A DNA stretch of 64,000 bases from Dendrobates tinctorius (lineage: Eukaryota), in the NCBI RefSeq assembly GCF_039654945.1, contig NW_027361863.1, positions 17,422,001-17,486,000 on the forward strand, in the 5' to 3' direction. Positions 6,501 to 63,690 of the stretch are shown in pieces. Both the position numbers and the translations under genes were made by a program. Under the pieces are notes generated by a model, which had not been told where the DNA came from, searched no databases, and saw only the letters and a program-made list of their open reading frames with translations. Within the stretch, counting starts at the first letter, position 1, and every line of letters begins with the position of its first letter.

Positions 6501-9500
6501 CACGTCCTTGGTGCTCCGGGCTCCTGTGCTTGGTTTGAACCGTCATTGTGCACTGACATACTCTCTTTATACTAACCCAGTGGATTTGGGCAGGGACCAG
6601 AGCTGAATTGCATGAACATCCCCTGACTGTGAATCTTGTTTTTTGTTTTTTTTCCATAGAAATCTGAAGACTCCAGTTCCAATACAGGAGACCCCCCTCG
6701 TAAGAAGCCCACCCGTCTCGCCATAGGTAGGATCTTCTAATTCATTAACCTGCCTGTAAGTAATGACTCCAATGGCTGCTCCGGATCTGAACCTCATATG
6801 TCGATAGCTTTTACATACTTTGTTGGTTTGAACTAAAATAAATGGATTTTTTTTTTTTTTCATTCAGTTAATGTTTTTTTTTTTCCCTAAAATGTTTTTG
6901 GTGGCATATATTTTGTAGCATTTTGCACAGTCCTATGGAAAAGGCAATGGGAAAACCCCCCCCCCCAGAGCGTGCTGCATTGAACAAAAAATAAAACATC
7001 ACTTCCCATAAAATAAACCACTAAAAACACCAAGACGCTGAATAGTGTTTTCTTATATTTTGCTAAAAACATTAAAGAGGGTTTTTTCAAGTTTTGGACT
7101 TCTCCGGTCTCCCAGCTGCAGATTATCAAAAAAGAATCCATAGCGCTGAGTCTTTGTTGCTGCTCCCGGTGTTTGTTATTCACTTGGACAGCGCTGCAGC
7201 CAATCGTTGAGCTCAGTGGCTTGTGCAGAGATGATTGCCTACCGTGGTGTCATCATGAAGAACAAATACTGGGAGCAGTGGTATAGACTCAGTGCCAGAT
7301 CTGGGGAGAGTGAGTAAAGTCCTGTTTTGTTTTGTTTTTTTACTTTCAGCCCGGGGACAGGGTTTTTCCCACACTGGAAAATTCCCTTTTAAATGTGTTG
7401 TCCTGGGCATATACATTGATGATCTATGCAAAGGTACCAGTGGGGCCTTGAACAGCTCAGCTTTGTACACCATGTAGTGGTCGTATCGGGTACTGCATCT
7501 CAGACACATTCACTTCGATTGGAGCTGAGTTGCAGTACCTAAGAGCGGCCAATACACAGTGTTTGGGGCTGTGCTGTTCCACTTCTATTACCATCCGCCT
7601 GTAACAGGAGCTGCAAACGACACCCACAGATCTGATCATACCAGAAGTCCTAGACAAACCATTGAAAGTACCATCTGAATGCATTAGGAAAATGCACGTC
7701 AGTGAAGGTGCCAGGGAAACAAGTGAATCCACTGCGTGTGACTTTACCTAATACTGTTTAACAGGGGACGAGTCTCCCCCTCTCCTGCTCACCAGACAGC
7801 TCCGTATCTCGATTTCCTCCATCTTTTTTCCTATCCCCTGTTTATCTCCTCTTTTTTAGGGATGGAGGGCGGATTTGACATGTGTGACGAGCAGTGTGAG
7901 TATGAAGAAGAGGTGAAGTTGATCATTCTGCCCGAGTTCCTGGATATTCAGCGGGAAGAACTGTTGGGTCTCCCAGAGATGGTCAGGGACCGGGTGGGTA
8001 ATCTGAGGTGTGTGTGTGTGGGGTGGGAGGGACAGATCTGTGTACCTTTTGGGATGATTTTTGTTGTGTTGCTCCTTTTCTGCTGCCCATCGTCATCTTC
8101 TTCTTGTTCACCTCACTCCATTTTCCTCCATCGCTCAGGTATCTTCTGCCATCGATGCCATCTTAGCTGCTGACTCTGCGTCCCGTAAGCAAGAGATTCA
8201 GGCGTGGGACGGCGAGGTCAGACAGGTTTCTAAACATGCGTTCAGTCTCCAGCAGCTTGGAGGGGCTCCCCGTATCCCTCCTTGGTAAGTGATTTTCTCC
8301 TAATAAGACTGACAAGTCGTCCAGAATTTGCCATCTTACAGCTGCTCCACTTTGCAGCCGAGGACAAGAATCCAGGCGGACTGTTTATTAAAAAGTTTCT
8401 ATCTAACCTTACTGCAGGTTGTGCCCTTAAATCTTGCCCCTCGTTTTATCCCCTTGCTGGTGGTCTCATCTGCTTCCACCTTTTCCTGCAGGGCTATGTA
8501 TACTTGACAATGACTATATGGCACATGGACGTTGCGGTCGTCTCACCCCTAATGACATTATATCCCGTGCCAGTGATGTATGTCACAAGGATAGAGGAGC
8601 ACATTGGGGAGGAAATTAAAGCCTTGCAGAGCTGGAGTCCTGGGTTCAAATCCCACCAATGACAACATCTGTGAGGAGTTTGTATGTTCTCCCCGTATTT
8701 GCGTGGGTATCCTCCGGGTTCTCTGGTTTCCTCCCACATTCCAAAGACATACTGATAGGGCTCACAATCTAAATTCCCTATCGGGGACAGTGCCAATAAT
8801 GTTTGTAAAGCACTGTGGAATTAATGGTGCTATATAAATGAGTAAAATAAATAAAAATAAAACTGTGATAATCTGCGTCCTAAGACCAACACCCATCACT
8901 CAAATCAAGGGGCAGAAGTGCTCAGATTATCATTGATCGTGAGTACACAACCACAGACTTTGTTGAGTCTGCACACTACTCGTTAATAAGCTGAATGTTA
9001 AATTGTTGATGGTCTCAGGACCTCCGGGAGCAACAGCTATGAACATATCAAGATGAGATCAGAGATTATTATTCTGCCTTTCTCTTACAAAACCTTTTGA
9101 ATATTCTCCATCCTGATATTTAAGATTTGCCTTCATTCACTTTCCTGCCTGTTGACTGTCTCCACCAGTGGTTGGAAGTGCAGCGTGTGCGATCTGCGGG
9201 AGAACCTGTGGCTCAATATGACAGACGGAGCGATCCTCTGCGGCAGACGATACTTTGACGGCAGCGGAGGGAATAACCACGCAGTGCAGCATTACAGAGA
9301 GACAGGGTACCCGCTGGCTGTCAAACTGGGCACAATCACTCCAGATGGAGGAGGTTGGTTTTTACTTTTTGCACAAACTCAATCAATCACTTTGCAGGAG
9401 TTAGGCCGGGCTCAGAATTTTAAGACCTGGACAATCGTCTCAACAAACTGAAGAAACTTTGCATGTAGGCTTCACTACATACCTTCTCCAGTTTTGTGTA

Positions 9501-12500
9501 TACAGCTCTTATGAGGACTTGCTTCCCAGTGTTTACAGGTCCCATCCTGCAGTTATGTATCGCTACTCGGCTACTGTACATCTGTCTTCACTGTCTGATA
9601 CATTGAGCTGCATAGAACCTGTGTTCACCAAACGGTAGAAGATATTGTATGACGCTTATGTGCAAAGTTTCTTCATTGATATAAATTCCACCCCCTATCT
9701 TATGATCAGGTCAGGCTAAACCCTCACAAAATAAAATTCTGACCCCAGCCTAAATGCTGTGATATGTAATGCCGACTATTTGCAAAGCTTCTTCATTTTA
9801 TTCCCCTCTTGTTTACATTGGAGCAAATAAAAAAATATATATTTTGAAAGTTTTTATCCCCTCAAATGCTGTAGGATTGACGCTTTTGCTCCTCATTGTC
9901 CCCTGTTCCCCCATCAGATGTCTACTCCTACGATGAAGATGACATGGTCCTGGACCCCAACCTGGCCGAACATCTATCGCACTTTGGTATCGACATGATG
10001 AAAATGCAGAAGGTGAGCGCGACCGTACTAGGATATCCCCGCCGTCCCACCCGTACACACGTAACATCTCTTCCCATTCCTAGACGGACAAGACGATGAC
10101 CGAGCTGGAAATTGATATGAACCAGAGGATCGGAGAATGGGAGCTGATCCAGGAATCAGGGGTGCAGCTGCAGCCTCTGTATGGACCCGGGTACACAGGG
10201 ATCCGCAATCTGGGCAACAGCTGCTATCTCAACTCCACCATGCAGGTCGTGTTCAGTATTCCTGCCTTCCAGCGCAAGTAAGTGTCTGTGACACAAGGTC
10301 CTCGCAACCATTGTGATTGTGCAGAGTATAAAGCCCTGCAATCAGGAGCAGATCAGCTGCGATCCTAGCTGGAAAGATGATGACAGATTATATCCCACGT
10401 CTCCTTTAATGTCTTTATTGCACTCCGTTAGTGCCCATAGTGAATAGGAGCGGTGGCAATGTCTTTCCCTGTTTTGCTCCCCAGCATGGCAGACTCAATA
10501 TGACATGGCGGTCATTTGTCGTGTTACACCCTATATACGCAAATGTATCTGCTCATCACAAGGGTTAAAGTGGAACATAACTCTCAGCATTGATTGCTTA
10601 CAGATATGTAGAACGAATGGAGCAAATATTCCATAAGTCGCCAGCTGATCCCACGCAGGATTTCAACACCCAAGTGTAAGTAGTGTGGAGGGAATATGCC
10701 GGGGCTGGAAGGAGGGGTCGCTATGAGTCTCCTATACCTTGGAAGATATCAAATGAACATTCTTGGTGATGTTTCCACAGAGCGAAGCTCGGCAACGGCC
10801 TGTCATCTGGTGAATACTCCAAGCCAGCGACTGAGAAAGAGGGCGAGGAGCAGAAGGTGAGACTTCAAATTGCAAAGAAATAAATACCTGGGATCCGATT
10901 CATCAAGACCGGCATTGTTCATACTGGTCTTGATGAGGGGTGTGCTGGAGTCAGACCTCCTGATTTATGAAGAGGTTGCACATTGTAAAGAACACCTAGA
11001 TGTGAGGACATGTCTTCAGCTTCAGACTGTGTACAGAGATGTGTCCGTTCACTGAGAGCAAGCAGACGTATAGCGAACGGTGATGAATTGAAGCACAAAG
11101 TATATTAGAAAGTTGCAGAACTTGTCTATTGCTAATTGGTTTCCTGGTACCCCCGCCAGTTTTTCTTTGAGCCCCGACCACCCTTTGTGTTTTTTGCAGG
11201 GTTTACAGGACGGCATCGCACCACGCATGTTTAAAGCACTTATAGGGAAGGGACATCCAGAGTTTTCCACCAACAGGCAGCAGGACGCCCAGGAGTTCTT
11301 CCTTCACTTCATAAACATGGTGGAGGTGAGTGGCAGTGGTATACATCTGTGTGTGTGCACAGTAGGGTGACCGCAAAAAATCGATGTCGGAATTTTGTTC
11401 GTCTGGACCCCACAAAACGATTCCCCTTTCCAGATATTGAGAGAGCCAAAATTTGAGCTCGATCAAACGACGTTAACCCGTGCCGCTCGTCGCTCAAAGT
11501 TTGAAAAAATCCAAATTGAGGTATTTTAAGATTTAGGTATTTTGCATAGTCTGTTAGACTATAAAGAATGTGACAACAACATTGCAGAAATAGCCCTGAC
11601 CAAATTTTCGAACCATTTGTGGTATTTGAATGCAGAGTTGGTGGGATTATCGTTTTTTGATCCCAGCATTACAGACAATGAAAAGTTGTTAATGGCTAAT
11701 AAATTGCTCAGTAGCACAGATGAACCATCAGAGCACGCTAGGGTTGTAAATCCAAAAGTTAGGAAAGAAAAATTAAAAGAGGTAGGAAGTAACCGACCTT
11801 AACGACCTTCTGACAAAAGATGAAGAACAAAAGCAATATGTCCTGCAAGTTGTAAGCAAATGCCGAGCATTATATTCTGACGTTTCAAAAACTACTTTAA
11901 CAAAAGCTCTAGAATAGATTAGATAACTATGTAAAATTATCAACTCATGTAGGTTAGCGTGCTCTGATGGTTCATCTGTGCTACTGAGCAATTTATTAGC
12001 CATTAACAACTTTTCATTGTCTGTAATGGTGGGATCAAAAAACGATAATCCCACCAACTCTGCATTCAAATACCACAAATGGTTCGAAAATTTGGTCAGG
12101 GCTATTTCTGCAATGTTGTTGTCACATTCTTTATAGTCTAACAGACTATGCAAAATACCTAAATCTTAAAATACCTCAATTTGGATTTTTTCAAACTTTG
12201 AGTGACGAGCGGCACGGGTTAACGTCGTTTGATCGAGCTCAAATTTTGGCTATCTCAATATCTGGAAAGGGGAATCGTTTTGTGGGGTCCAGACGAACAA
12301 GATTCTGACATTTTTTTTCCCCCCCATATGAGATCCGGTCACCCTAGTGCACAGCTCTGTACATTTTCGGAGGTAACTTTCCGCTTTACGTCTCCACAGA
12401 GAAATTGCCGCAGCTCTTCTAATCCCAATGAAGTATTCCGGTTTTTGGTGGAGGAGAAGATTAAATGTCTGGTGTCCCAGAAAGTGAAGTACACGCAGAG

Positions 12501-29787: not shown

Positions 29788-40217
<10,430 letters not shown>

Positions 40218-40568: not shown

Positions 40569-41560
40569 CACTGTCTCCCTGCCTCCTGTGTGTGTAGCAC
40601 TGGGGGTCTGTCACACTGTCTCCCTGCCTCCTGTGTGTGTAGCACTGGGGGTCTGTCACACTGTCTCCCTGCCTCCTGTGTGTGTAGCACTGGGGGTCTG
40701 TCACACTGTCTCCCTGCCTCCTCTGTGTGTAGCACTGGGGGTCTGTCACACTGTCTCCCTGCCTCCTCTGTGTGTAGCACTGGGGGTCTGTCACACTGTC
40801 TCCCTGCCTCCTGTGTGTGTAGCACTGGGGGTCTGTCACACTGTCTCCCTGCCTCCTGTGTGTGTAGCACTGGGGGTCTGTCACACTGTCTCCCTGCCTC
40901 CTGTGTGTGTAGCACTGGGGGTCTGTCACACTGTCTCCCTGCCTCCTCTGTGTGTAGCACTGGGGGTCTGTCACACTGTCTCCCTGCCTCCTGTGTGTGT
41001 AGCCCTGGGGGTCTGTCACACTGTCTCCCTGCCTCCTGTGTGTGTAGCCCTGGGGGTCTGTCACACTGTCTCCCTGCCTCCTGTGTGTGTAGCCCTGGGG
41101 GTCTGTCACACTGTCTCCCTGCCTCCTCTGTGTGTAGCCCTGGGGGTCTGTCACACTGTCTCCCTGCCTCCTCTGTGTGTAGCACTGGGGGTCTGTCACA
41201 CTGTCTCCCTGCCTCCTGTGTGTGTAGCACTGGGGGTCTGTCACACTGTCTCCCTGCCTCCTGTGTGTGTAGCACTGGGGGTCTGTCACACTGTCTCCCT
41301 GCCTCCTGTGTGTGTAGCACTGGGGGTCTCACACTGTCTCCCTGCCTCCTGTGTGTGTGTGTGTGTAGCACTGGGGGTCTGTCACACTGTCTCCCTGCCT
41401 CCTGTGTGTGTAGCACTGGGGGTCTGTCACACTGTCTCCCTGCCTCCTGTGTGTGTAGCCCTGGGGGTCTGTCACACTGTCTCCCTGCCTCCTCTGTGTG
41501 TGTAGCACTGGGGGTCTGTCACACTGTCTCCCTGCCTCCTGTGTGTAGTGTTGAGGGTCT
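40569..41560. repeat. 45-bp minisatellite
   Basis: CACTGTCTCCCTGCCTCCTGTGTGTGTAGCACTGGGGGTCTGTCA x ~21. Confidence 0.97.
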
Positions 41561-42069
41561 GTTGCACAGTCTCCCTGCCTCCTGTGTTGAGGGTCTGTTG
41601 CACTCTCTCAATGTGTAGCACGGGGGGTGTCGCATGCCCTTTTCCTTACATGCACAGCTTGGGGGAATGTCACACTCTTCCTGCACTTCTGTGTGTGGGG
41701 GTCTGTCACACTCTCCCTGTCCTTCCATGTGTAATGTGCTGGGTCCTGTTGCGTTCTCTCTCGCTGCCTTTCAACGTGTGGCACATGTCGTCCTGCTTCT
41801 TCCACCTGTAGCATGGGGTCCTTTCCCTGAGCCTCTGTGTGTAGTGCTCGGCTCTGTCACACTCTCTCCCTGCCCCCCAGTTTGTAGCACTGGGTTCTGT
41901 CACTCACCCTGCCCCTCCATGTATAGCACTGGGTCTGTTGCATGCGCTTGTTTTCCTTCCATATGTAGTGTTTGGGGTCTGTCACATACTCTTCTGCTTT
42001 TCTATGCGGGGAGGTCTGTGGCGCTCTTCTGATCCCTCCATGTGTAACGTGCAGGGTCCTGTCACTCTC

Positions 42070-43010
42070 CCACCTGTAGCGCAGGGTCCTCTCCTTTCCT
42101 CTCTGCTCTTTTCCTCCTGTAGCGTGGGGTCCTCTCCTTTTCTCTCTGCTCTCTTCCTCCTGTAGCTCGGGGTCCTCTCCTTTTCTCCCTGCGCTCTTCC
42201 ACCTGTAGCGTGGGGTCCTCTCCTTTTCTCCCTGCGCTCTTCCACCTGTAGCGTGGGGTCCTCTCCTTTTCTCCCTGCGCTCTTCCACCTGTAGCGTGGG
42301 GTCCTCTTCTTTTCTCCCTGCTCTTTTCCACCTGTAGCTCGGGGTCCTCTCCTTTTCTCCCTGCTCTCTTCCTCCTGTAGCTCGGGGTCCTCTCCTTTTC
42401 TCCCTGCTCTCTTCCTCCTGTAGCTCGGGGTCCTCTCCTTTTCTCCCTGCTCTCTTCCTCCTGTAGCTCGGGGTCCTCTCCTTTTTCTCCCTGCTCTCTT
42501 CCTCCTGTAGCTCGGGGTCCTCTCCTTTTTCTCCCTGCTCTCTTCCTCCTGTAGCTCGGGGTCCTCTCCTTTTTCTCCCTGCTCTCTTCCTCCTGTAGCT
42601 CGGGGTCCTCTCCTTTTTCTCCCTGCTCTCTTCCTCCTGTAGCTCGGGGTCCTCTCCTTTTTCTCCCTGCTCTCTTCCTCCTGTAGCTCGGGGTCCTCTC
42701 CTTTTTCTCCCTGCTCTCTTCCTCCTGTAGCTCGGGGTCCTCTCCTTTTTCTCCCTGCTCTCTTCCTCCTGTAGCTCGGGGTCCTCTCCTTTTTCTCCCT
42801 GCTCTCTTCCTCCTGTAGCTCGGGGTCCTCTCCTTTTTCTCCCTGCTCTCTTCCTCCTGTAGCTCGGGGTCCTCTCCTTTTTCTCCCTGCTCTCTTCCTC
42901 CTGTAGCTCGGGGTCCTCTCCTTTTTCTCCCTGCTCTCTTCCTCCTGTAGCTCGGGGTCCTCTCCTTTTTCTCCCTGCTCTCTTCCTCCTGTAGCTCGGG
43001 GTCCTCTCCC
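42070..43010. repeat. 43-44-bp pyrimidine-rich minisatellite
   Basis: CCTGTAGCTCGGGGTCCTCTCCTTTTTCTCCCTGCTCTCTTCCT x ~21. Confidence 0.97.
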
Positions 43011-47431: not shown

Positions 47432-47954
47432 AATAAACGGGTGTATACACACTGGGGATATTATCTGCACTACGCAAGTGAGATTTCCAAAAGTGGATCC
47501 CAGTCCTAACATTTTGTTTTGGTAATGGATCCTTATGGGAAGCAAAACTTTAAACCAAGGCACAAATCAGCGCAACTGTAAGTGGGCGCCAAAATTCACT
47601 CATCACCAATAACCTGATCGGTAGCACAGATCTAACATAGCTGCATGGAAAGCTAGCAAGCTTGGTAGCCATATAATCACTTAAGGAGATGATCCTAAAG
47701 ACAGGACAGACCTCCATATGCAATGATAAAGTTATGGTTGTAGACGTTGGCATTTTGGTCCTCTCCCTAATTTTAGATGATTTCCAATGGTATTGAGCTT
47801 GAAATTGCGTGCATTGCTCAAACTACACAGATTCAGTAGACACACGTCACTTGGGATGAGGGTTGTCTTCAAAAAGGTAAACCAATCCCTGCCATATTTG
47901 CATCTTCCTCTGATTACCTATCTGCACCTCTCACCTTTGTCTCTCATTATCACC

Positions 47955-48863
47955 ATGTCTTCTACCACTATCAAGGCTTTTAGTGCAGTCCACATCTTGG
48001 CTTTCCTCAGCGGATTGATCACAAATGGTTTTGTCCTCGGGGTCAACATTTGGAACCAAAAACATTCAGTCCCTCTGACTAAATCAGACTTCTACATGTG
48101 CTATTTGGCAATAACCAACCTTTCTCTCCAGATCTGGACCACAGCCAGATGGATATGTAACATTGGCCAAGAGAATGACCTTGTCTGCCGCTTAATGAAT
48201 GCCCTAACCACAACCTCCATTTCGTGCAGTCTACTGTTGACCGCATCTCTTTGTATGTTCTACTGCAGCAGGATTGTCGTCTTCAGATGCATTTTTTTTC
48301 GATGGGTGCAAAAACACGTTGTCCAAAAGTACCAATACCTGATTATACTGTCTGTTCTTTTCTGCGCAGCGATGGGTTTACCTTTGGCATGGACCATTGA
48401 CGTGTACAAAAACACGTCATGCCTTTGCTCCTCAGCTCCGTGTAGCGAAAGGATCGACACACCTTCTTACAAAGTGATATATCGCTCGGTAATAATGCTT
48501 TTTGGGTACGCAATACCACTTTTTTACGTTGTCCTAGCAGCTGGTCTTATACTTCGGTCGCTTGTACACCATGTAAGACGAATGCATACCAATATGAGAA
48601 TGGGACATGAAGTCCGCATGGTGGCCCACCTACAAGCTGGATGCACCGTGCTGTCTTTGCTCCTTTTGTTTAGTGTATACTTTGTGATATCTGTACTGTT
48701 TTTAGCAGACTTGGTTCCTCGGGACAGTCCGTTCTCACATGCTTCTTATTTAGCACCAATGCTCTACTCCACTGTACATGGTCCAATAATGATTAAAGGG
48801 AACGTCAAACTACGAAATGCAGCAAGAGGCCTCGTAAAGTCATTAAAAACTTTGAGGTGGTAG
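47955..48863 (+). CDS. Taste receptor type 2-like GPCR (TAS2R-like A), 302 aa, intronless CDS
   Basis: Seven hydrophobic segments. TAS2R motifs: TNGFVLGVN (TM1), SDFYMCYLAITN (TM2), LCMFYCSRIV (TM3), NTS sequon in ECL2, LILRSLVHHVRRM (TM5), AHLQAGCTVLSLLLL (TM6), HGPIMIKGNVKLR (TM7/H8). Start placed at the ATG in CACCATGT; the ORF is open from 47787. Confidence 0.88.
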   Translation: MSSTTIKAFSAVHILAFLSGLITNGFVLGVNIWNQKHSVPLTKSDFYMCYLAITNLSLQIWTTARWICNIGQENDLVCRLMNALTTTSISCSLLLTASLCMFYCSRIVVFRCIFFRWVQKHVVQKYQYLIILSVLFCAAMGLPLAWTIDVYKNTSCLCSSAPCSERIDTPSYKVIYRSVIMLFGYAIPLFYVVLAAGLILRSLVHHVRRMHTNMRMGHEVRMVAHLQAGCTVLSLLLLFSVYFVISVLFLADLVPRDSPFSHASYLAPMLYSTVHGPIMIKGNVKLRNAARGLVKSLKTLRW

Positions 48864-49321
48864 CAATTATAATTTGTAATCCATATCTGTCTATTTCTGC
48901 ATTCTGTTTCTTTCTGACAATACCTACAACGAAACATGGATCTCATTGTCTGCACCCTTCATCGTCTAAAGCGGACGTTTTACTGCCATGGAAACACTGG
49001 TGGAGAAGGTAACCCAATGCTCCTGTATTTTGCATCTGTTTGCCTCTGACTTTTTTTTTTTCATCTTCGCCTCCATCCTGTATTTACTTACTGCAGTCTT
49101 TGCTGGTGACTTTGTAGTAGTGGTTGATCAACAGAAATGGAAATTCTGGAATCTGCGTCCACCACTGGCTAATAAATGTCTACTGTACACTTGTCATCAT
49201 GATTGACTCTTTGATGTTGTCGGAAACTATGACGTCTTTAGCCAAATTGCCATTAACTTTGTGCTTGTTCAATTCTATCACCTTTTCTATAAGATGAGCA
49301 ACAAAAGCATATTAAAGTAGA

Positions 49322-50119
49322 CCATCTGATGGTCCACTTCTTATGATCTGATGGTCCACTTCCTTATGATCATCTGATGGTCCACCTTCTTTATGATCAT
49401 CTGATGGTCCACCTTCCTTATGATCATCTGATGGTCCACCTTCCTTATGATCATCTGTTGGTCCACCTTCCTTATGATCATCTGATGGTCCACCTTCCTT
49501 ATGATCATCTGATGGTCCACCTTCCTTATGATCATCTAATGGTCCACCTTCCTTATGATCATCTGTTGGTCCACCTTCCTTATGATCATCTGATGGTCCA
49601 CCTTCCTTATGATCATCTGTTGGTCCACCTTCCTTATGATCATCTAATGGTCCACCTTCCTTATGATCATCTGTTGGTCCACCTTCCTTATGATCATCTG
49701 ATGGTCCACCTTCCTTATGATCATCTGTTGGTCCACCTTCCTTATGATCATCTGATGGTCCACCTTCCTTATGATCATCTGTTGGTCCACCTTCCTTATG
49801 ATCATCTGATGGTCCACCTTCCTTATGATCATCTGATGGTCCACCTTCCTTATGATCATCTGATGGTCCACCTTCCTTATGATCATCTGATGGTCCACCT
49901 TCCTTATGATCATCTGTTGGTCCACCTTCCTTATGATCATCTGATGGTCCACCTTCCTTATGATCATCTGATGGTCCACTTTCCTTATGATCATCTGTTG
50001 GTCCACCTTCCTTATGATCATCTGATGGTCCACCTTCCTTATGATCATCTGATGGTCCACCTTCCTTATGATCATCTGATGGTCCACCTTCCTTATGATC
50101 ATCTGATGGTCCACCTTCC
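49322..50119. repeat. 27-bp minisatellite
   Basis: CATCTGATGGTCCACCTTCCTTATGAT x ~29. Confidence 0.97.
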
Positions 50120-50932
50120 TTCTTCTTAAATTGTTCTGCTACTATAAAGGAACTATTGGTGGAAATGGCAACACGTTGCTTCTGTTCGTGCTCACATTGT
50201 CTATTTTGACTTCTCATATCTTTCCATTGTGTATTCGACCATTGCCTTCAATCTCTCCTCTGCATAGACTTGTTAGGTTTCTCACCTATGATTATAGAGT
50301 GATTGATCTACGAGATCGTTTTGCAGTGATCTGTATGCCTATAACCAACTTTCCAGATATGGTATGTGGTCAGGATATAGCTGGTTTTGAATCAAAGTCC
50401 GATACTCCTACTATACACCGTCTTAGTCGGGCGTCACATCACGTCTTGGTTCTAATTCATAACTCTTATCAGGAAGACTACTCTATTGTTTCCTAAAGGA
50501 TGGACACCGACGGAAAGATGGTCAAGTGGAGTCCAAAGTTTCATATTTTGGATTCTCGCTGTTTCATTAAAGTCAGTGGCTTTTCTTGTGTAATCAGATT
50601 GAAGCCTATGAACGGCGGTCAAGCGCTAGGTGAACCTAGCCTTACATGATTTCCACAAATTGTACCATTGTACCATCGTTACTCATTTTGCTAGCTTTTA
50701 GCATTAGGGCATCAACTTTTTGCGCTTTTCCAAACCAACTTCTTATAAATCAAGGGAATGTGTATATAAATCTAGCTGCACATTATGACGTTTTTAGGGC
50801 TAGGGTCACCTGACCGAGGATTCTTTGATCCAAGAGAATTGGCCGATCATGCTAATTGCACTCTGATGAAACTCTGTCCGAGGAAAAAAATTGGACACAT
50901 GTATGGCAAAATAGAATAAAACAGATCTGATA

Positions 50933-51049
50933 GGGCAGCACGGTGGCTCAGTGGTTAGCACTGCAGCCTTGCAGCGCTGGAGTCCTGGGTTCGAATCCCA
51001 CCTAGGACAACATCTGCAAGGAGTTTGTATGTTCTCCCCGTGTTTGCGT

Positions 51050-51080
<31 letters not shown>

Positions 51081-51207
51081 ACACTCCAAAGACATACTGA
51101 TAGGGAATTTAGATTGTGAGCCCCATCGGGGACAGTGATGAAAATGTGTGCAAACTGTAAAGCGCTGCGGAATATGATAGCGCTATATAAAAATAAAGAT
51201 TATTATT
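50933..51207 (+). mobile_element. Full-length tRNA-derived V-type SINE
   Basis: A-box TGGCTCAGTGG, B-box GGTTCGAATCCC, V-SINE-like core, L2-like 3' end with (ATT)n, TSD ATCTGAT. Confidence 0.9.
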
Positions 51208-51428
51208 ATCTGATGTTTTGTCAGATCACACTGGGACAGAAAATACGGTGCACGAGCCCTTAGGACTTCAAGCTGATCACCACACTGATTATTTTTTTCT
51301 CCTTCACCCTCCCTCTTCTAAGGCTGGCATGTAAAGCAATTGGTGGCAGAGGTAACTCAACGCTCCGGCACTTTGCATCCATCAATCCATCTTCTACCTA
51401 CTTTGACTCCATTTTCACATCAATCTCC

Positions 51429-52385
51429 ATGATGCATGCAGCTCTTTATTTCATTCTTTCTGCTGCCTCCTTCGGGGGAATATCAACCAATGGTTTTGCC
51501 GTGGGAGTCAATCTATGGGACTGGAAACTTAGAGGTGATCTGAAAGCCTCTGATTATTTTATATGTAGCATTGCCTTATCCAATCTCTCTCTCCAGTTGT
51601 GGTTGGGATTCGCTTGGCTCTGTGACAACGACTGGCACGACGACACCTTTTGCCGCATCGACTATGTCTTGACGATGATTTCCACTCATTTTAGCCTGGT
51701 ATTGGCGGCAGCCATGTGTTCGTTTTTTTGTTCCAAAATTGTGACGGTCAACAACTGGTTAATTCAGATTGTGAGACGACTGTACAGCGAATCGTACGGC
51801 TTTATCATCTGTCGCATCTTCGTTATCTGCATCGTCTTGGGGTTACCACTTTTCTGGGTTAAAAACCTAGAACCATCCACCGGCTCAGACTCTACGTCCC
51901 TTAACATAAGTGATTCCGCCAACTTGTATGAGACCCGAATGGAGAGCTATTTGGAAGCTTATATGTCCTTTATTTTGACCTGTGGGTATACGTTTCCTGT
52001 GATGATGAGTTTGGTGTCAGCTGGTTGTATAATGACATCTCTCGTGAAGCACGTGAAGAGGATGCGAAGCACCATGGAGAAAAAGCATGGCGTCCTTATA
52101 GAAGCCCACCGACGCACCGCCTGGACAGTGCTCTCCTTACTCGCATTAATCCTTATGCACTTTGTGACATCCATTATCATTACGATGGAGGTGTTTCCCG
52201 CAGGAGATCTCGGCTCAGCTATCTGTAATGTTCTCTCTCGATTATACACGCCAATGTTTGGGATTCTACTTCTTAGAAGTAATTCTAAACTTAGGAGGGT
52301 GGCAAGCGAGATTAAAAGGAAAGCAATAGGGAAGATAAAGGCACTGACATGGACAAGAAACAATGCACCAGTCCATATCAATTAG
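51429..52385 (+). CDS. Taste receptor type 2-like GPCR (TAS2R-like B), 318 aa, intronless CDS
   Basis: TNGFAVGVNLWDW, SDYFICSIALSN, MCSFFCSKIV, NIS sequon, IMTSLVKHVKRM, EAHRRTAWTVLSLL, ILLLRSNSKLRR. Confidence 0.88.
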   Translation: MMHAALYFILSAASFGGISTNGFAVGVNLWDWKLRGDLKASDYFICSIALSNLSLQLWLGFAWLCDNDWHDDTFCRIDYVLTMISTHFSLVLAAAMCSFFCSKIVTVNNWLIQIVRRLYSESYGFIICRIFVICIVLGLPLFWVKNLEPSTGSDSTSLNISDSANLYETRMESYLEAYMSFILTCGYTFPVMMSLVSAGCIMTSLVKHVKRMRSTMEKKHGVLIEAHRRTAWTVLSLLALILMHFVTSIIITMEVFPAGDLGSAICNVLSRLYTPMFGILLLRSNSKLRRVASEIKRKAIGKIKALTWTRNNAPVHIN

Positions 52386-54705: not shown

Positions 54706-56470
54706 ACAGTGCAGTGACCGAATCTTCGAATAAAAAGCGCCGCTATTTTTTTATTTAAAATGATACAACTAAGATGCGATTGAAGTGGAGACTTTCAGCT
54801 TTACATAAAGGGTTGAACAGAAATATCCTGTGAGACGTTTAGGAATTGCAACCTCATTTCAGGAGTTCAAAAGTAATTGGACAAAATAACTTTTTCCTTT
54901 GCAGGAAATGACCTGAAGTCTTGGACATCACCATACACTGGGTTTCCTCCTGTGTGATGCTTTGCCGTCTTTCCTGCAGTGACTTCAGTTGTTGCTTGTT
55001 TGTGGCTCTTTCTGCCTTAAGTTTTGTCTTCAGCCTGTGAAATGAGGCTCGATGGGGCTGAGAGCTGGTGATGACTCGGCCATCGCAGAATATTCTACTT
55101 CTTTGCTTTTTGCAGTATGTTTTGGGTCATTGTTCATTACTGTACTGTGAAACCCCGTCCAATCGACGTTGCTGCATTTGGTTGAATCTGAGCAGAAAGT
55201 ATCACCCTGTACACACAGAATACATCCGCCGCTTCTGTTTTCAGTCACGTCATCAATAACCACTAGTGACCCGATGCCATGAATGCCCGCGCCAGCACGA
55301 CGCCTCCACCACATTACAGAAGATGCGGCGTGCTTTGGATCATGAGCTGCTTCAAACCTTCTCTATGCTTTCTTCTTCCGGTACAGGATGATCATTGTTT
55401 TGTCTACACATAAAATGCTTTTCCAGAACTGGGCGGCTTCTTTACATGTTGTTTTTGGCAAAGTCTAGTCTGCCTGTAACACTCACCAGGTTAGATGGTT
55501 CCTCCAAACCCAAGGTCCAGGTGTGCCAACAGGCCACAGTGCAACTCGGGCACGTGGAACACGGAGAAATGAGGGACTGGAACCGCAGGTGGAATGCTGG
55601 AAACCATAGGCAGGCGGAGATGTCCAGGAGACCGCAGACAGGATGCTGGAAACTGCTGACAAGCAGGAGACCACAGACAGGCAGGTGGGAAACATGCAGG
55701 AGACCACAGGCAGGAGGGATGCTGGGAACTACTGGCAGGTGGGAGACGTCCAGGAGACCGCAGACAGGATGCTGGAAACTGCTGACAAGCAGGAGACCAC
55801 AGATAGGCAGGTGGGAAACGTGCAGGAGACCACAGGTAGGAGGGATGCTGGGAACTACTGGCAGGTGGGAGACGTCCAGGAGACCGCAGACAGGATGCTG
55901 GAAACTGCTGACAAGCAGGAGACCACAGACAGGCAGGTGGGAGACGTCCAGGAGACCGCAGGCGGGAGGGAAACGTCTAGGAGACCACAGGCAAGCAGAC
56001 GTGATGCTGTAAACCGCTGGCAGGCGGGAAACGTCTAGGAGACCTGCAGGCAGCAGCTGAGCAGGTTGAGGAGTATGGAGCAAGCCACTGTCTTAGTAGT
56101 ACTGATATCTTAATACCAAGACACAGGAGTCTTGGTATTAAGCTTTATATGAGCTTTATAAAGGCCAGGACGGGTGGTCACATGGAATCATCTGTAAATC
56201 CCGAAGTGAAGCACAACAGAGTCTAGCAAACTGGGGTAAGGGAAGCAAGGCACAGATCTGCGACAGGTGCGTAACACTGGCATTTCCATTTTTATGGCTG
56301 ATTAATGGTTTTCACCATGTGGTGAACCCTCTGTATTTGCTCTCAAGAAGTCGTCTCTTTATGGTAGATTTAGATACCGAAACACCTACTTCCCGGAGGG
56401 TGTTTTTCACTTGGGTGGAAGTTGTGAAGGTTTCTTTTTTCACCGTGCAAATGATTCTGTGATCATTATT
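54706..56470 (-). mobile_element. Degraded Tc1-like transposon, interrupted by a probable solo LTR
   Basis: Starts TA|CAGTG; transposase remnant NNDPKHTAK...SSPALSPIE (ORF 55030-55314); boundaries approximate. Confidence 0.6.
55475..56276. mobile_element. Probable solo LTR containing a ~126-bp tandem repeat
   Basis: TGTAAC...GTAACA termini; flanks CTGCC/CTGGC (5-bp TSD, one mismatch); internal repeats 55615-56050. Confidence 0.55.
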
Positions 56471-57619: not shown

Positions 57620-60600
57620 GACAGTATGTGGACAGCTGTATATAGCCGGTACACGTGTATACAATATGTGGACATCTGTATATAGCCGGTACACTTGTAT
57701 ACAGTATGTGGATGGCTGTATATATCCAGTACACATGTATCCAATATTTGGACGGCTGTATATAGCTGGTACATGTGTATACAGTGTGTGGACGGCTGTA
57801 TATAGCTGGTATACGTGTATACAGTGTGTGGATGGCTGTGTACAGCTGGTACACGTGTATACAGTGTGTGGTCGGTTGTATATAGCTGGTGCACAGTTTG
57901 TGGACGGTTGTATATAGCTGGTACACAGTGGGTGGACGGTTGTATATAGCTGGTACACAGTGTGTGGACGGTTGTATATAGCTGGTACACAGTGTGTGGA
58001 CGGTTGTATATAGCTGGTACATTGTGTGGACGGTTGTATATAGCTGGTATAGTGTGTGGACGGTTGTATATAGCTGGTACAATGTGTGGACGGTTGTATA
58101 TAGCTGGTACACAGTGGGTGGACGGTTGTATATAGCTGGTACACAGTGGGTGGACGGTTGTATATAGCTGGTACACAGTGTGTGGACGGTTGTATATTGC
58201 TGGTATACAGTGTGTGGACGGTTGTATATTGCTGGTACACAGTGGGTGGACGGTTGTATATAGCTGGTACACAGTGTGGATGGTTGTATATAGCTGGTAC
58301 ACAGTGGGTGGACGGTTGTATATAGCTGGTACACAGTGTGGACAGTTGTATATAGCTGGTACACAGTGGGTGGACGGTTGTATATTGCTGGTACACAGTG
58401 GGTGGACGGTTGTATATAGCTGGTACACAGTGGGTGGACGGTTGTATATAGCTGGTACACAGTGGGTGGACTGTTGTATATAGCTGGTACACAGTGTGTG
58501 GACGGTTGTATATTGCTGGTATACAGTGTGTGGACGGGTGTATATTGCTGGTACACAGTGGGTGGACGGTTGTATATAGCTGGTACACAGTGGGTGGACG
58601 GTTGTATATAGCTGGTACACAGTGGGTGGACGGTTGTATATAGCTGGTACACAGTGTGTGGACGGTTGTATATTGCTGGTATACAGTGTGTGGACGGGTG
58701 TATATTGCTGGTACACAGTGGGTGGACGGTTGTATATAGCTGGTACACAGTGGGTGGACGGTTGTATATAGCTGGTACACAGTGGGTGGACGGTTGTATA
58801 TAGCTGGTACACAGTGTGTGGACGGTGGTATATTGCTGGTACACAGTGTGTGGACGGTTGTATATTGCTGGTACACTGTGTGGACGGTTGTATATAGCTG
58901 GTACACAGTGGGTGGACGGTTGTATATAGCTGGTACACAGTGTGGACAGTTGTATATAGCTGGTACACAGTGGGTGGACGGTTGTATATAGCTGGTACAC
59001 AGTGTGTGGACGGTTGTATATTGCTGGTATACAGTGTGTGGACGGGTGTATATTGCTGGTACACAGTGGGTGGACGGTTGTATATAGCTGGTACACAGTG
59101 GGTGGACGGTTGTATATAGCTGGTACACAGTGGGTGGACGGTTGTATATAGCTGGTACACAGTGTGTGGACGGTTGTATATTGCTGGTACACAGTGTGTG
59201 GACGGTTGTATATGGCTGGTACACTGTGTGGACGGTTGTATATAGCTGGTACACAGTGGGTCGACGGTTGTATATAGCTGGTACACAGTGTGGACAGTTG
59301 TATATAGCTGGTACACAGTGGGTGGACGGTTGTATATAGCTGGTACACAGTGGGTGGACGGTTGTATATAGCTGGTACACAGTGGGTGGACGGTTGTATA
59401 TAGCTGGTACACAGTGCGTGGACGGTTGTATATTGCTGGTATACAGTGTGTGGACGGGTGTATATTGCTGGTACACAGTGGGTGGACGGTTGTATATAGC
59501 TGGCACACAGTGGGTGGACGGTTGTATATAGCTGGTACACAGTGGGTGGACGGTTGTATATAGCTGGTACACAGTGTGTGGACGGTTGTATATTGCTGGT
59601 ACACATTGTGTGGACGGTTGTATATTGCTGGTACACTGTGTGGACGGTTGCATATAGCTGGTACACAGTGGGTGGACGGTTGTATATAGCTGGTACACAG
59701 TGTGGACAGTTGTATATAGCTGGTACACAGTGGGTGGACGGTTGTATATAGCTGGTACACAGTGGGTGGACGGTTGTATATAGCTGGTACACAGTGCGTG
59801 GACGGTTGTATATTGCTGGTACACAGTGGGTGGACGGTTGTATATAGCTAGTACACAGTGTGTGGACGGTTGTATATAGCTGGTACACAGTGGGTGGACG
59901 GTTGTATATTGCTGGTACACAGTGTGTGGACGGTTGTATATAGCTGGTACACAGTGTGGACAGTTGTATATAGCTGGTACACAGTGGGTGGACGGTTGTA
60001 TATAGCTGGTACACAGTGGGTGGACGGTTGTATATAGCTGGTACACAGTGCGTGGACGGTTGTATATTGCTGGTACACAGTGGGTGGACGGTTGTATATA
60101 GCTAGTACACAGTGTGTGGACGGTTGTATATAGCTGGTACACAGTGGGTGGACGGTTGTATATAGCTAGTACACAGTGTGTGGACGGTTGTATATAGCTA
60201 GTACACAGTGGGTGGACGGTTGTATATTGCTGGTACACAGTGGGTGGACGGTTGTATATTGCTGGTACACAGTGGGTGGACGGTTGTATATAGCTGGTAC
60301 ACAGTGGGTGGACGGTTGTATATAGCTGGTACACAGTGGGTGGAAGGTTGTATATAGCTGGTACACAGTGGGTGGACGGTTGTACTGTATATAGCTGGTA
60401 CACAGTGTGGACGGTTGTATATAGCTGGTGCACAGTGTGTGGACGGTTGTATATAGCTGGTACACAGTGGGTGGACGGTTGTATATTGCTGGTACACAGT
60501 GGGTGGACGGTTGTATATAGCTGGTACACAGTGGGTGGACGGTTGTATATAGCTGGTACACAGTGTGTGGACGGTTGTATATTGCTGGTACACTGTGTGG

Positions 60601-62730
60601 ATGGTTGTATATAGCTGGTACACAGTGGGTGGACGGTTGTATATAGCTGGTACACAGTGTGTGGACGGTTGTATATAGCTGGTACACAGTGGGTGGACGG
60701 TTGTATATAGCTGGTACAGTGTGGACGGTTGTATATTGCTGGTACACTGTGTGGATGGTTGTATATTGCTGGTACACAGTGGGTGGACGGTTGTATATAG
60801 CTGGTACACAGTGTGTGGACGGTTGTATATTGCTGGTACACAGTGGGTGGACGGTTGTATATAGCTGGTACACAGTGTGTGGACGGTTGTATATTGCTGG
60901 TACACTGTGTGGTTGGTTGTATATTGCTGGTACACAGTGGGTGGACGGTTGTATATAGCTGGTACACAGTGGGTGGACGGTTGTATATAGCTGGTACACA
61001 GTGTGTGGACGGTTGTATATTGCTGGTACACAGTGGGTGGACGGTTGTATATTGCTGGTACACAGTGGGTGGACGGTTGTATATTGCTGGTACACAGTGT
61101 GTGGATGGTTGTATATTGCTGGTACACTGTGTGGACGGTTGTATATTGCTGGTACACAGTGGGTGGACGGTTGTATATAGCTGGTACACAGTGTGTGGAC
61201 GGTTGTATATAGCTGCTACACAGTGTGTGGACGGTTGTATATTGCTGGTACACAGTGGGTGGACGGTTGTATATAGCTGGTACACAGTGGGTGGACGGTT
61301 GTATATAGCTGGTATACAGTGGGTGGACGGTTGTATATAGCTGGTACACAGTGTGTGGACGGTTGTATATAGCTGGTACACAGTGGGTGGACGGTTGTAT
61401 ATAGCTGGTACACAGTGGGTGGACGGTTGTATATAGCTGGTACACAGTGGGTGGACGGTTGTATATTGCTGGTACACAGTGGGTGGACGGTTGTATATAG
61501 CTGGTACACAGTGTGTGGACGGTTGTATATTGCTGGTACACAGTGGGTGGACGGTTGTATATTGCTGGTACACAGTGGGTGGACGGTTGTATATAGCTGG
61601 TACACAGTGTGTGGACGGTTGTATATTGCTGGTACACAGTGGGTGGACGGTTGTATATAGCTGGTACACAGTGGGTGGACGGTTGTATATAGCTGGTACA
61701 CACTGTGTGGACGGTTGTATATTGCTGGTACACAGTGGGTGGACGGTTGTATATAGCTGGTACACAGTGGGTGGACGGTTGTATATAGCTGGTACACAGT
61801 GGGTGGACGGTTGTATATAGCTGGTACACAGTGTGTGGACGGTTGTATATAGCTGGTACACAGTGTGGACGGTTGTATATAGCTGGTACACAGTGGGTGG
61901 ACGGTTGTATATAGCTGGTACACAGTGTGTGGACGGTTGTATATAGCTGGTACACAGTGGGTGGACGGTTGTATATAGCTGGTACACAGTGTGTGGACGG
62001 TTGTATATTGCTGGTACACAGTGGGTGGACGGTTGTATATAGCTGGTACACAGTGTGGACGGTTGTATATAGCTGGTACACAGTGGGTGGACGGTTGTAT
62101 ATAGCTGGTACACAGTGGGTGGACGGTTGTATATAGCTGGCACACAGTGTGGATGGTTGTATATAGCTGGTACACAGTGGGTGGACGGTTGTATATAGCT
62201 GGTACACAGTGGGTGGACGGTTGTATATAGCTGGTACACAGTGGGTGGACGGTTGTATATAGCTGGTACACAGTGTGTGGACGGTTGTATATTGCTGGTA
62301 CACAGTGGGTGGACGGTTGTATATAGCTGGTACACAGTGGGTGGACGGTTGTATATAGCTGGTACACAGTGGGTGGACGGTTGTATATAGCTGGTACACA
62401 CTGTGTGGATGGTTGTATATTGCTGGTACACAGTGGGTGGACGGTTGTATATAGCTGGTACACAGTGGGTGGACGGTTGTATATTGCTGGTACACAGTGG
62501 GTGGACGGTTGTATATAGCTGGTACACAGTGGGTGGACGGTTGTATATAGCTGGTACACAGTGGGTGGACGGTTGTATATAGCTGGTACACAGTGGGTGG
62601 ACGGTTGTATATAGCTGGTAGACAGTGGGTGGACGGTTGTATATAGCTGGTACACAGTGGGTGGACGGTTGTATATAGCTGGTAGACAGTGGGTGGACGG
62701 TTGTATATTGCTGGTACAGTGTGTGTGAAC
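57620..62730. repeat. 5.1-kb 32-bp satellite/minisatellite array
   Basis: CACAGTGGGTGGACGGTTGTATATAGCTGGTA x ~160, with 30-bp variants and 40-bp units at the left end. Confidence 0.98.
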
Positions 62731-62829
62731 GGTTACCCAGAGACGCACAGGACACTCTCCTGTCATTTCTGGGCCTCCTGTATCTATTTTACATCAGACG
62801 TCGTTGTGAGTAAAATACTAAAATGAGTA

Positions 62830-63166: not shown

Positions 63167-63690
63167 CGTCACTACGCCCCGTGTTTGGTCGGGGGAGGGT
63201 CACTACGCCCCGTGTTTGGTCGGGGAGGGTCACTACGCCCCATGTTTGGTCGGGGGAGGGTCACTACGCCCCGTGTTTGGTCGGGGGAGGGTCACTACGC
63301 CCCGTGTTTGGTCGGGGGAGGGTCACTACGCCCCGTGTTTGGTCGGGGGAGGGTCACTACTCCCTGTGTTTGGTCGGGGGAGGGTCACTACGCCCCGTGT
63401 TTGGTCGGGGGAGGGTCACTACGCCCCGTGTTTGGTCGGGGGAGGGTCACTACGCCCCGTGTTTGGTCGGGGGAGGGTCACTACGCCCCGTGTTTGGTCG
63501 GGGGAGGGTCACTGCGCCCCGTGTTTGGTCGGGGGAGGGTCACTGCGCCCTGTGTTTGGTCGGGGGAGGGTCACTGCGCCCCGTGTTTGGTCGGGGGAGG
63601 GTCACTGCGCCCCGTGTTTGGTCGGGGGAGGGTCATTATGTCCCGTGTTTGGTCGGGGGAGGGTCACTACGCCCCGTGTTTGGTTGGGGG
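63167..63690. repeat. 31-bp G-rich minisatellite in the first intron
   Basis: GTCACTACGCCCCGTGTTTGGTCGGGGGAGG x ~16. Confidence 0.96.

What the first reader, a model, noticed from the sequence alone, without database searches (positions are those of the whole stretch)
47955..52385. Isolated pair of divergent TAS2R-like receptors inside the conserved USP5-TPI1-LRRC23 housekeeping block
Seen: two intact, intronless, same-strand 7TM ORFs with TAS2R signature motifs, highly diverged from each other, between TPI1 and probable LRRC23. Known: in mammals this interval holds SPSB2 and no taste receptors, and amphibian TAS2Rs are greatly expanded, mostly in large clusters. Inference: this may be an old, positionally conserved amphibian receptor subfamily outside the main clusters, possibly with a non-gustatory or endogenous-ligand role. 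It is the best candidate for an undescribed system in this window.
Basis: partly seen in the sequence, partly recalled or inferred. Interest (0 to 1): 0.72.

Follow-up and report, generated by a model that had tools for sequence, protein, structure and literature searches.

The report
Old frog bitter-receptor pair beside TPI1
Two intact bitter-taste-receptor (TAS2R) genes sit just after the housekeeping gene TPI1 in this poison-frog-like genome; the same small locus is found across frogs, so it is an old but ordinary branch of a known receptor family, not a new system.

Summary
Two intact, single-exon, same-strand ORFs (47955-48863, 302 aa; 51429-52385, 318 aa) are full-length TAS2Rs by Pfam, with no V1R hit. 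They are 33% identical and lie 7.7 kb after the end of TPI1. The model of gene a is a confident 7TM fold, and its best solved matches are TAS2R46, TAS2R14 and TAS2R4.

They are not recent species-specific copies. Both belong to one strongly supported frog-wide clade on a long stem, with a newt gene as sister. The a lineage is found in Ascaphus, Bombina and neobatrachians; the b lineage was found only in neobatrachians. The order TPI1 then TAS2R recurs in Engystomops and Bombina. Pairwise dN/dS is 0.18-0.45.

LRRC23 was not seen in the window. "Isolated" is only partly shown, because Anomaloglossus carries at least five b copies.

Orthologues are already auto-annotated in other frogs as "taste receptor type 2 member X-like". 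Nothing supports a non-gustatory or endogenous-ligand role, and no RNA data were available.

One addition: every gene of the clade has a conserved GGTAAC-CAAT plus octamer (TTTGCAT) element 49-73 nt before its ATG. It is a candidate POU-factor switch. The scan had already noted an octamer cassette before other TAS2Rs of this genome, on other DNA.

Verdict: new members of a known kind, of modest interest.

The parts
9191..10320 (+). USP5 exons (part of the gene only; upstream neighbour of TPI1)
   Evidence: Six-frame peptides with the ZnF-UBP motif [11 protein letters not shown] and the catalytic Cys box [13 protein letters not shown]. The gene name rests on the known USP5-TPI1 adjacency, not on a test done here.
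29854..40217 (+). TPI1 (triosephosphate isomerase) coding region, several exons
   Evidence: Peptides [28 protein letters not shown] and GGASLKPEF, followed by a stop. The pieces match the PF00121:TIM genes lying upstream of the TAS2Rs in Engystomops and Bombina.
47876..47903 (+). Conserved upstream element of gene a: GGTAAACCAAT, 9 nt, ATTTGCAT (octamer in reverse orientation), with the octamer 59 nt before the ATG
   Evidence: The same two blocks with near-fixed spacing precede all clade genes, including those of Ascaphus and Bombina.
47955..48863 (+). TAS2R gene a, single exon, 302 aa (end includes the stop codon)
   Evidence: Pfam PF05296 E 5e-29. 82% identical to the Anomaloglossus orthologue. 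AF2 pLDDT 90.7, and the top 17 PDB fold hits are all class T GPCRs. dN/dS 0.18-0.34.
49323..50121 (.). 27-bp minisatellite, about 30 copies, between the two genes; it explains the long repeat ORFs on both strands
51351..51378 (+). Conserved upstream element of gene b: GGTAACTCAAC, 9 nt, CTTTGCAT, with the octamer-like block 58 nt before the ATG
51429..52385 (+). TAS2R gene b, single exon, 318 aa (end includes the stop codon)
   Evidence: Pfam PF05296 E 2e-24. 78-79% identical to the Anomaloglossus b copies. Sequence hits to solved TAS2R46, TAS2R4 and TAS2R43. dN/dS 0.28-0.45.

Best explanation
These are two functional genes for class T G-protein-coupled receptors (TAS2R bitter/xenobiotic receptors). 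They form an ancient tandem pair directly downstream of TPI1. Shown: both are intact, single-exon, full-length TAS2Rs. They belong to one frog-wide TAS2R lineage that split into an 'a' and a 'b' branch long ago. The position next to TPI1 is shared with distant frogs. Both evolve under purifying selection. Each is preceded by a conserved CCAAT-like plus octamer element. Inferred: like other TAS2Rs, they bind small bitter or toxic compounds in the transmembrane pocket and signal through gustducin-type G proteins in chemosensory cells. Also inferred: the octamer element is the binding site of a POU-domain factor (POU2F3 being the obvious candidate) that turns the genes on in such cells. Ligands and tissues of expression are unknown.
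For: Family: Pfam TAS2R over the full profile for both genes, with no V1R hit. The AF2 model of a has pLDDT 90.7 and shows 7TM plus helix 8, and its 17 best PDB fold matches are all TAS2R46, TAS2R14 or TAS2R4 (TM-score 0.78/0.82 for the best match, 7xp6). Sequence hits to solved TAS2R46, 43 and 4.
Age and orthology: the exhaustive profile search shows a sharp score gap after the clade (444-280 bits for frog representatives, 207 for a newt, 160 or less for everything else). In the careful ML tree the frog clade has 100/100 support on a stem of 0.93 and the newt is sister at 98/98. The a lineage (Ascaphus, Bombina, neobatrachians) has 98/93 support. The b lineage (Ranoidea plus Hyloidea in the tree) has 100/99. 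A b-like ORF also follows gene a in Pseudophryne; it was not in the tree.
Synteny: Engystomops has TIM, then a, then b. Bombina has TIM, then one TAS2R. Pseudophryne has a then b. Anomaloglossus has a followed by at least five b copies. Ascaphus has the pair duplicated in tandem. In Mantella the TAS2Rs lie next to EMG1, another 12p13.31-block gene by my own knowledge.
Selection: dN/dS is 0.18-0.34 for a and 0.28-0.45 for b.
Regulation: the two-block element is the only conserved sequence upstream of a and b genes whose other flanks no longer align. It has exactly two matches in the 64-kb window, against 0 expected. A loose form of it lies before nearly every copy in the fetched frog loci.
Against: There is no expression evidence. 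No run on record as RNA holds the locus. The one possible RNA contig covers only 47754-47885 and has no canonical splice site at its break. No ligand data exist. The timing of the a/b split is not firm: an AU test of a later, neobatrachian-only duplication gives p = 0.041, chosen after seeing the tree. Ascaphus' two genes are each other's sisters. POU2F3 binding is only an inference from the motif. There is no TATA box between the element and the ATG, and the transcription start is unknown. Presence in Xenopus, Rana and Bufo was not shown: the word searches returned none, and the 50 X. tropicalis TAS2Rs in the supplement of PMC11798467 lack the clade's TM1-TM3 motifs. That is weak evidence.
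Confidence: 0.85

Rival explanations
1. The pair acts mainly outside the mouth (skin, gut, liver, brain) as xenobiotic or toxin sensors rather than as taste receptors proper.
For: PMC11798467 reports that many amphibian TAS2Rs, including those of a poison dart frog, are expressed only in extra-oral tissues. This does not conflict with the family assignment.
Against: No expression data exist for these two genes. Octamer/POU motifs fit taste type II cells and tuft-like chemosensory cells equally well, so the element does not discriminate.
Confidence: 0.3
2. One reading: a conserved receptor for an endogenous ligand (for example a steroid or bile acid) with a non-gustatory role, kept in place inside a housekeeping block.
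For: The a lineage is found across roughly 200 My of frog evolution, single-copy in most of the species sampled here and at a fixed position. Its dN/dS is as low as 0.18. Papers report steroids and bile acids as TAS2R agonists (titles; not read).
Against: Copy number is not constrained. There are at least five b copies in Anomaloglossus, three related proteins in Eleutherodactylus and a duplicated pair in Ascaphus. dN/dS of 0.3-0.45 between close relatives is not unusually low. There is no ligand or expression evidence.
Confidence: 0.08
3. One or both ORFs are non-functional relics, or chance ORFs in repeat-rich DNA.
For: The surroundings are full of minisatellites that create long spurious ORFs.
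Against: Both ORFs are intact and full-length. Intact orthologues exist in many frogs, dN/dS is below 0.5, and the upstream element is conserved.
Confidence: 0.03
4. They are vomeronasal type 1 (V1R/ORA) receptors rather than TAS2Rs.
For: V1R/ORA is the sister family of TAS2R and has a similar size and a single-exon structure (own knowledge).
Against: There is no PF03402 hit at E<=1, while PF05296 scores 87-102 bits. The best fold matches are all TAS2Rs. In the trees both genes fall among named TAS2Rs; no V1R/ORA outgroup was included.
Confidence: 0.01

Closest known systems
Vertebrate TAS2R (class T GPCR) bitter taste receptors, e.g. human TAS2R46, TAS2R14 and TAS2R4 with solved structures
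   Same: Pfam family, about 300 aa, single coding exon, short N-terminus, 7TM plus helix 8 fold, and the family-typical residues N in TM1, F-Y/F-C-S-K/R-I at the end of TM3, SL..H..RM after TM5 and N.KLR after TM7.
   Different: Only 18-21% identical to the solved human receptors. They belong to a frog-specific lineage with no amniote member among the 75 best representatives.
RefSeq-predicted frog orthologues: 'taste receptor type 2 member 40-like' and '9-like' (Anomaloglossus baeobatrachus), '119-like' and '13-like' (Engystomops pustulosus), '143-like' (Pseudophryne corroboree), '1-like' (Bombina bombina), 'member 33' and '13-like' (Ascaphus truei)
   Same: Orthologous or co-orthologous genes, 44-82% identical, at the same locus where this could be seen.
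   Different: The names are automatic best-hit labels and differ between species. None is functionally characterised as far as I could find.
Conserved TAS2R loci and 'copy-number-constrained orthologs' described in PMC11798467 (PLoS Genet 2025)
   Same: The same kind of observation: a minority of TAS2Rs sit in small or singleton loci, keep orthology over long times and can be traced by neighbouring conserved genes.
   Different: The paper does not mention TPI1 or USP5. Its table of orthologous loci lacks the two assemblies I could cross-check, Pseudophryne and Bombina. I could not map its one five-species orthologue group (its Fig 5C) onto this clade, because the amphibian sequences are not in the stored supplement.
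Octamer (ATGCAAAT) sites bound by POU2F-class factors; POU2F3 is the master regulator of type II taste cells and tuft cells
   Same: An exact ATTTGCAT (a lineage) or a one-mismatch variant (b lineage) lies at a fixed distance before the ATG. POU-family motifs are enriched in open chromatin of mouse type II taste cells (PMC10239704).
   Different: No binding or reporter data exist. The element is paired with a GGTAAC-CAAT block, not with the TATA box that an earlier scan note (s1-369577) reports for other TAS2Rs of this genome.

Membership tests
TAS2R (Pfam PF05296, class T GPCR) | Profile match above the curated gathering score over most of the profile | tested here: met
   Gene a: 101.8 bits, profile positions 1-300 of 303. 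Gene b: 86.6 bits, positions 8-297. Cutoff 22.2 bits.
TAS2R (Pfam PF05296, class T GPCR) | About 300-aa receptor encoded by one uninterrupted exon, with a short N-terminus and no large ectodomain | tested here: met
   Uninterrupted ORFs of 302 and 318 aa. The first helix starts at residue 4 in the model.
TAS2R (Pfam PF05296, class T GPCR) | Seven-transmembrane fold closest to solved class T GPCRs | tested here: met
   Gene a: pLDDT 90.7, pTM 0.87, and PDB fold ranks 1-17 are all TAS2R46, TAS2R14 or TAS2R4. Gene b was tested by sequence only, with TAS2R46, TAS2R4 and TAS2R43 at E about 1e-5.
TAS2R (Pfam PF05296, class T GPCR) | Family-wide conserved residues | tested here: met
   The nearly invariant columns of a 64-sequence TAS2R alignment are N24, L99, C104, I107, S202, L203, H206, M210, A228, N283 and L286, numbered on gene a. 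The corresponding motifs are found in gene b.
TAS2R (Pfam PF05296, class T GPCR) | Falls among named TAS2Rs of other species in a tree | tested here: met
   ML trees of 74 and 43 sequences. No V1R/ORA outgroup was included.
TAS2R (Pfam PF05296, class T GPCR) | Activated by bitter or toxic small molecules and couples to gustducin/Gi-type G proteins | not testable with these tools
   Needs a heterologous calcium or G-protein assay.
TAS2R (Pfam PF05296, class T GPCR) | Expressed in taste receptor or other chemosensory cells | tested here: inconclusive
   No listed run on record as RNA holds the locus. Only a 132-nt contig piece lies upstream of gene a, in a run guessed to be RNA.
V1R / ORA vomeronasal receptors (Pfam PF03402) | Profile match to PF03402 | tested here: not met
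   Not listed at E<=1 for either protein.
Copy-number-constrained TAS2R orthologues (CNCO, as defined in PMC11798467) | Exactly one copy in more than 50% of species and two or more copies in at most 5% | tested here: inconclusive
   The a lineage is single in the window, Anomaloglossus, Engystomops, Mantella and Bombina. It is doubled in Ascaphus, and Pseudophryne has two near-identical proteins. The b lineage is clearly multi-copy in Anomaloglossus and Eleutherodactylus. Too few species were sampled.

The most novel reading that the evidence does not exclude
The GGTAAC-CAAT plus octamer element kept before both paralogues since before the frog radiation may be the core cis-switch, bound by POU2F3 or a related factor, that confers chemosensory-cell expression on TAS2R genes. 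The a lineage may be a rare long-lived TAS2R with a conserved, possibly endogenous or ecologically constant, ligand. If so, this small locus would be a compact model for how bitter receptor genes are switched on, which is still poorly understood.
Probability: 0.2. Interest if true: 0.55.

Novelty: new member of a known kind. Interest (0 to 1): 0.3.

Why it matters
TAS2R genes usually turn over quickly, and amphibians hold the largest repertoires known. A two-gene locus that has stayed beside TPI1 since the frog ancestor is therefore a useful fixed point for comparing receptors between species. It could serve deorphanisation work, for example testing whether orthologues share agonists. It could also help date the amphibian expansion. 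The conserved upstream element gives a short, testable candidate for the little-understood transcriptional control of bitter receptors. None of this changes what the genes are: ordinary members of a well-known family.

Tried and rejected
1. V1R/ORA identity: rejected by Pfam.
2. The long ORF from 47787 as the true start of gene a: rejected. Orthologues start at the MSST methionine, and the conserved upstream element lies inside the extension.
3. The long ORFs at 49.3-50.2 kb on both strands: these are translations of a 27-bp minisatellite, not genes.
4. LRRC23 or SPSB2 in the window: no LRR motif in 52.4-64 kb and no convincing ORF in 40.2-47.9 kb, which hold only minisatellites and repeats.
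5. Expression: the run search found no run on record as RNA. The 256-nt contig of run X1 breaks at 47754, where there is no AG acceptor, and its other half is not in the window. I do not count it as evidence of splicing or transcription.
6. Synteny outside frogs: no DNA was returned for the newt locus because the file is too large. The best caecilian and Anolis hits are other lineages at other loci.
7. Mapping onto the published catalogue: the stored supplement of PMC11798467 is cut before the relevant frogs, and its locus table lacks the assemblies I could cross-check.
8. A full-text search for TAS2R together with TPI1, USP5 and frog found nothing relevant.
9. A simple hydropathy count gave only 5-6 segments. 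I judged it too crude and replaced it with the structure prediction.
Full report
**Observation**

ORF b is 51429-52385 (318 aa). Both match Pfam TAS2R (PF05296) over essentially the whole profile: 101.8 and 86.6 bits against a cutoff of 22.2. A weak rhodopsin-family echo appears and V1R does not. The two proteins are 33% identical over 296 residues.

tblastn with both proteins finds nothing else TAS2R-like in the 64 kb. The long ORFs between the genes, on both strands at 49.3-50.2 kb, are translations of a 27-bp minisatellite with about 30 copies.

**Neighbours**

TPI1 lies upstream on the same strand. Its signature peptides ([37 protein letters not shown] followed by a stop) fall at 29878, 36950, 37626 and 40164. 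Its coding region therefore ends near 40217, 7.7 kb before gene a. USP5-type peptides (ZnF-UBP and Cys box) lie at 9.2-10.2 kb.

Between TPI1 and gene a I saw only minisatellites and repeat ORFs, and no SPSB2-like ORF. Downstream of gene b there is no LRR motif in any frame. That region is dominated by tandem arrays, including a 32-bp satellite of about 154 copies at 57857-62734.

**What the proteins are**

An AlphaFold2 model of gene a, built on a 64-sequence alignment, has mean pLDDT 90.7 and pTM 0.87. It shows seven long helices plus a C-terminal helix 8. Its 17 best Foldseek matches among solved structures are all class T GPCRs (TAS2R46, TAS2R14, TAS2R4). The best TM-scores are 0.78/0.82, ahead of class A receptors.

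By sequence, both proteins hit solved TAS2R46, TAS2R43 and TAS2R4. Family-typical residues are present in both. On every feature I could test, they are TAS2Rs.

**Relatives**

- The word-indexed search found orthologues of a in Anomaloglossus (82%), Engystomops (65%), Leptodactylus (63%), Mantella (50%), Pseudophryne (49%), Ascaphus (48% and 45%) and Bombina (46%).
- It found an orthologue of b in Anomaloglossus (78%).
- All carry automatic RefSeq names of the form "taste receptor type 2 member X-like".
- The closeness to Anomaloglossus (dS about 0.3) and an earlier scan note (s1-382879) both point to a poison-frog-type genome.
- Whether the subfamily is confined to frogs depends on finding no relatives elsewhere, so I ran the exhaustive profile search. 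Scores fall from 444-280 bits (five frog representatives) to 207 (one protein of the newt Lissotriton helveticus) and then to 160 or less.

**Phylogeny**

The careful ML tree of 43 sequences gives these results:

- The frog clade has 100/100 support on a stem of 0.93 substitutions per site.
- The newt protein is its sister (98/98).
- One branch (98/93) holds Ascaphus (its two genes are sisters), Bombina and the neobatrachian a genes, in the order of the species tree.
- The other branch (100/99) holds only neobatrachian b genes (Pyxicephalus, Mantella, Engystomops, Eleutherodactylus, Anomaloglossus and the window).
- The best caecilian, axolotl and Anolis hits fall elsewhere.

A duplication only after the Ascaphus and Bombina splits is 10.9 log-likelihood units worse, with p-AU 0.041. 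That is borderline, and I chose the test after seeing the tree. The a/b split is therefore at least as old as Neobatrachia and probably older than crown frogs.

**Synteny**

| Species | Arrangement |
|---|---|
| Engystomops | TIM gene at 2269-7994, a at 10001-10900, b at 11315-12268, all on the + strand |
| Bombina | last TPI1 exon ends at 3412, the single TAS2R starts at 10001 |
| Pseudophryne | a followed by b within 230 nt |
| Anomaloglossus | a followed by two b copies within 6 kb, and three more about 54 kb on |
| Ascaphus | the two-gene unit tandemly duplicated, copies 98-99% identical |
| Mantella | b-like, then a, then EMG1 on the opposite strand |

By my own knowledge, EMG1 belongs to the same human 12p13.31 block as USP5 and TPI1. 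The position after TPI1 is thus shared by lineages that span the deepest frog splits: roughly 200 My or more by published timetrees (own knowledge, not tested here).

The newt locus could not be read. "Isolated pair" needs a caveat. Given the b amplification in Anomaloglossus, further copies could lie beyond the 11.6 kb that follow gene b in the window.

**Selection**

Nei-Gojobori dN/dS values are as follows:

- Gene a: 0.34 (window vs Anomaloglossus) and 0.18 (window vs Engystomops).
- Gene b: 0.43-0.45 (window vs Anomaloglossus) and 0.28 (window vs Engystomops).
- Among the young Anomaloglossus b paralogues: 0.53-0.56.

Both genes are under purifying selection, a more than b. I have no same-species values for other TAS2Rs to compare against.

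**Upstream element**

Following a lead from an earlier scan note (s1-369577: an octamer cassette before other TAS2Rs of this genome), I looked before the two ATGs.

- Gene a has an exact ATTTGCAT at 47896-47903, 59 nt before the ATG.
- Gene b has CTTTGCAT at 51371-51378, 58 nt before the ATG.
- In each case GGTAA[AC][CT]CAA[TC] lies 9 nt further upstream.
- Aligning the 120 nt before the ATG of eleven a and b genes, from Ascaphus to the window, shows that these two blocks are the only conserved columns besides the ATG, with near-fixed spacing.
- The combined pattern matches exactly twice in the 64-kb window, against 0 in 100 shuffles. The pattern was derived from these two sites, so this shows uniqueness, not significance.
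- A loose form (GTAA, 16-22 nt, TTTGCAT) lies before nearly every TAS2R copy in the fetched frog loci. It also occurs at two orphan sites that look like relics of lost copies.

Synonymous sites between these species are saturated (dS 1.3-1.8). Retention of the element in both paralogues therefore argues for function.

The octamer is the classical site of POU2F-class factors, and POU2F3 defines type II taste and tuft cells (own knowledge). POU-family motifs are enriched in open chromatin of mouse type II taste cells (PMC10239704). Binding here is an inference only.

**Expression**

The run search returned no run on record as RNA.

- One DNA-like run of a close relative covers the stretch at 95-99% identity.
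- A run guessed to be RNA gives one 256-nt contig, of which 132 nt match 47754-47885.
- That contig's break has no splice acceptor, and its other half is absent from the window.

I draw nothing from this.

**Literature**

PMC11798467 (PLoS Genet 2025) catalogues 9,291 vertebrate TAS2Rs. It describes extra clusters in amphibians, a minority of copy-number-constrained orthologues, loci traced by conserved neighbours, and wide extra-oral expression.

- Its data set included the Pseudophryne and Bombina assemblies that carry clade members, so these genes are very probably in that catalogue.
- It does not mention TPI1 or USP5.
- I could not map its five-species orthologue group onto this clade.
- The 50 X. 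tropicalis TAS2Rs held in its supplement lack the clade's TM1-TM3 motifs. That is a weak hint that Xenopus may lack the lineage.
- A full-text search for TAS2R with TPI1, USP5 and frog found nothing relevant.

**Verdict**

- Right: this is an old, positionally conserved frog TAS2R lineage with a salamander relative.
- Wrong: it is not an undescribed system.
- Untested: nothing speaks for a non-gustatory or endogenous-ligand role.

The most useful new point is the conserved upstream element. It is a candidate switch of a kind this scan had already noted on other DNA of the same genome.

Noticed in passing
L001 11038-11064 (Anomaloglossus) and L006 11040-11066 (Mantella): Orphan copies of the b-type upstream element (ttggtggagaagGTAAC..CTTTGCAT) with no TAS2R ORF behind them. 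They are probably the remains of lost b copies.
   Followed up: partly
L001 12981-16836 and L002 259-17428 (Anomaloglossus baeobatrachus CM109166.1, about 23.87-23.94 Mb): At least five intact b-type copies, 84-86% identical to each other in the two pairs compared, spread over about 60 kb. The b lineage has amplified in this close relative, while the window shows one copy.
   Followed up: partly
L004 530-2739 and 10001-12209 (Ascaphus truei): The two-gene unit is tandemly duplicated with 98-99% protein identity between the units. The two gene types within a unit are each other's closest relatives (63% identical). This fits an independent duplication or gene conversion in Ascaphus.
   Followed up: partly
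L008 10001-17722 (Anolis sagrei, protein XP_060615857.2, 402 aa): The gene model spans two separate full-length TAS2R-like ORFs (10025-10885 and 16790-17668) and does not translate back to the protein in the locus. It is likely a fused annotation. GTAA..TTTGCAT patterns occur four times in this locus, more than chance would give.
   Followed up: no
window 40569-41587, 42065-43009, 55585-55971, 57857-62734, 63168-63694: Dense minisatellite and satellite arrays: 45 bp x22, 44 bp x22, 126 bp x3, 32 bp x154 and 31 bp x17. They flank the receptor pair and create many long spurious ORFs and strong GC skew.
   Followed up: partly
window 54857-55362 (- strand): Stop-free stretches with Tc1/mariner-like transposase wording (...NDPKHTAKS...). 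This is probably a decayed transposon. It was not tested against any family library.
   Followed up: no
L007 about 9900-10001 (Rhinatrema bivittatum TAS2R XP_029437358.1): An unrelated caecilian TAS2R has ATTTGCAC followed 4 nt later by TATAAAG about 80-100 nt before its ATG. This is an octamer-plus-TATA layout like the one an earlier scan note describes for other TAS2Rs of the window's genome. The gene lies next to an olfactory receptor gene.
   Followed up: no
window 47700-49300 versus run X2: A DNA-like public run of a coded 'organism B' covers the gene a region at 95-99% identity, with about 30 substitutions and one 2-nt insertion outside the ORF. It is a close relative or a divergent population of the source species.
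   Followed up: no
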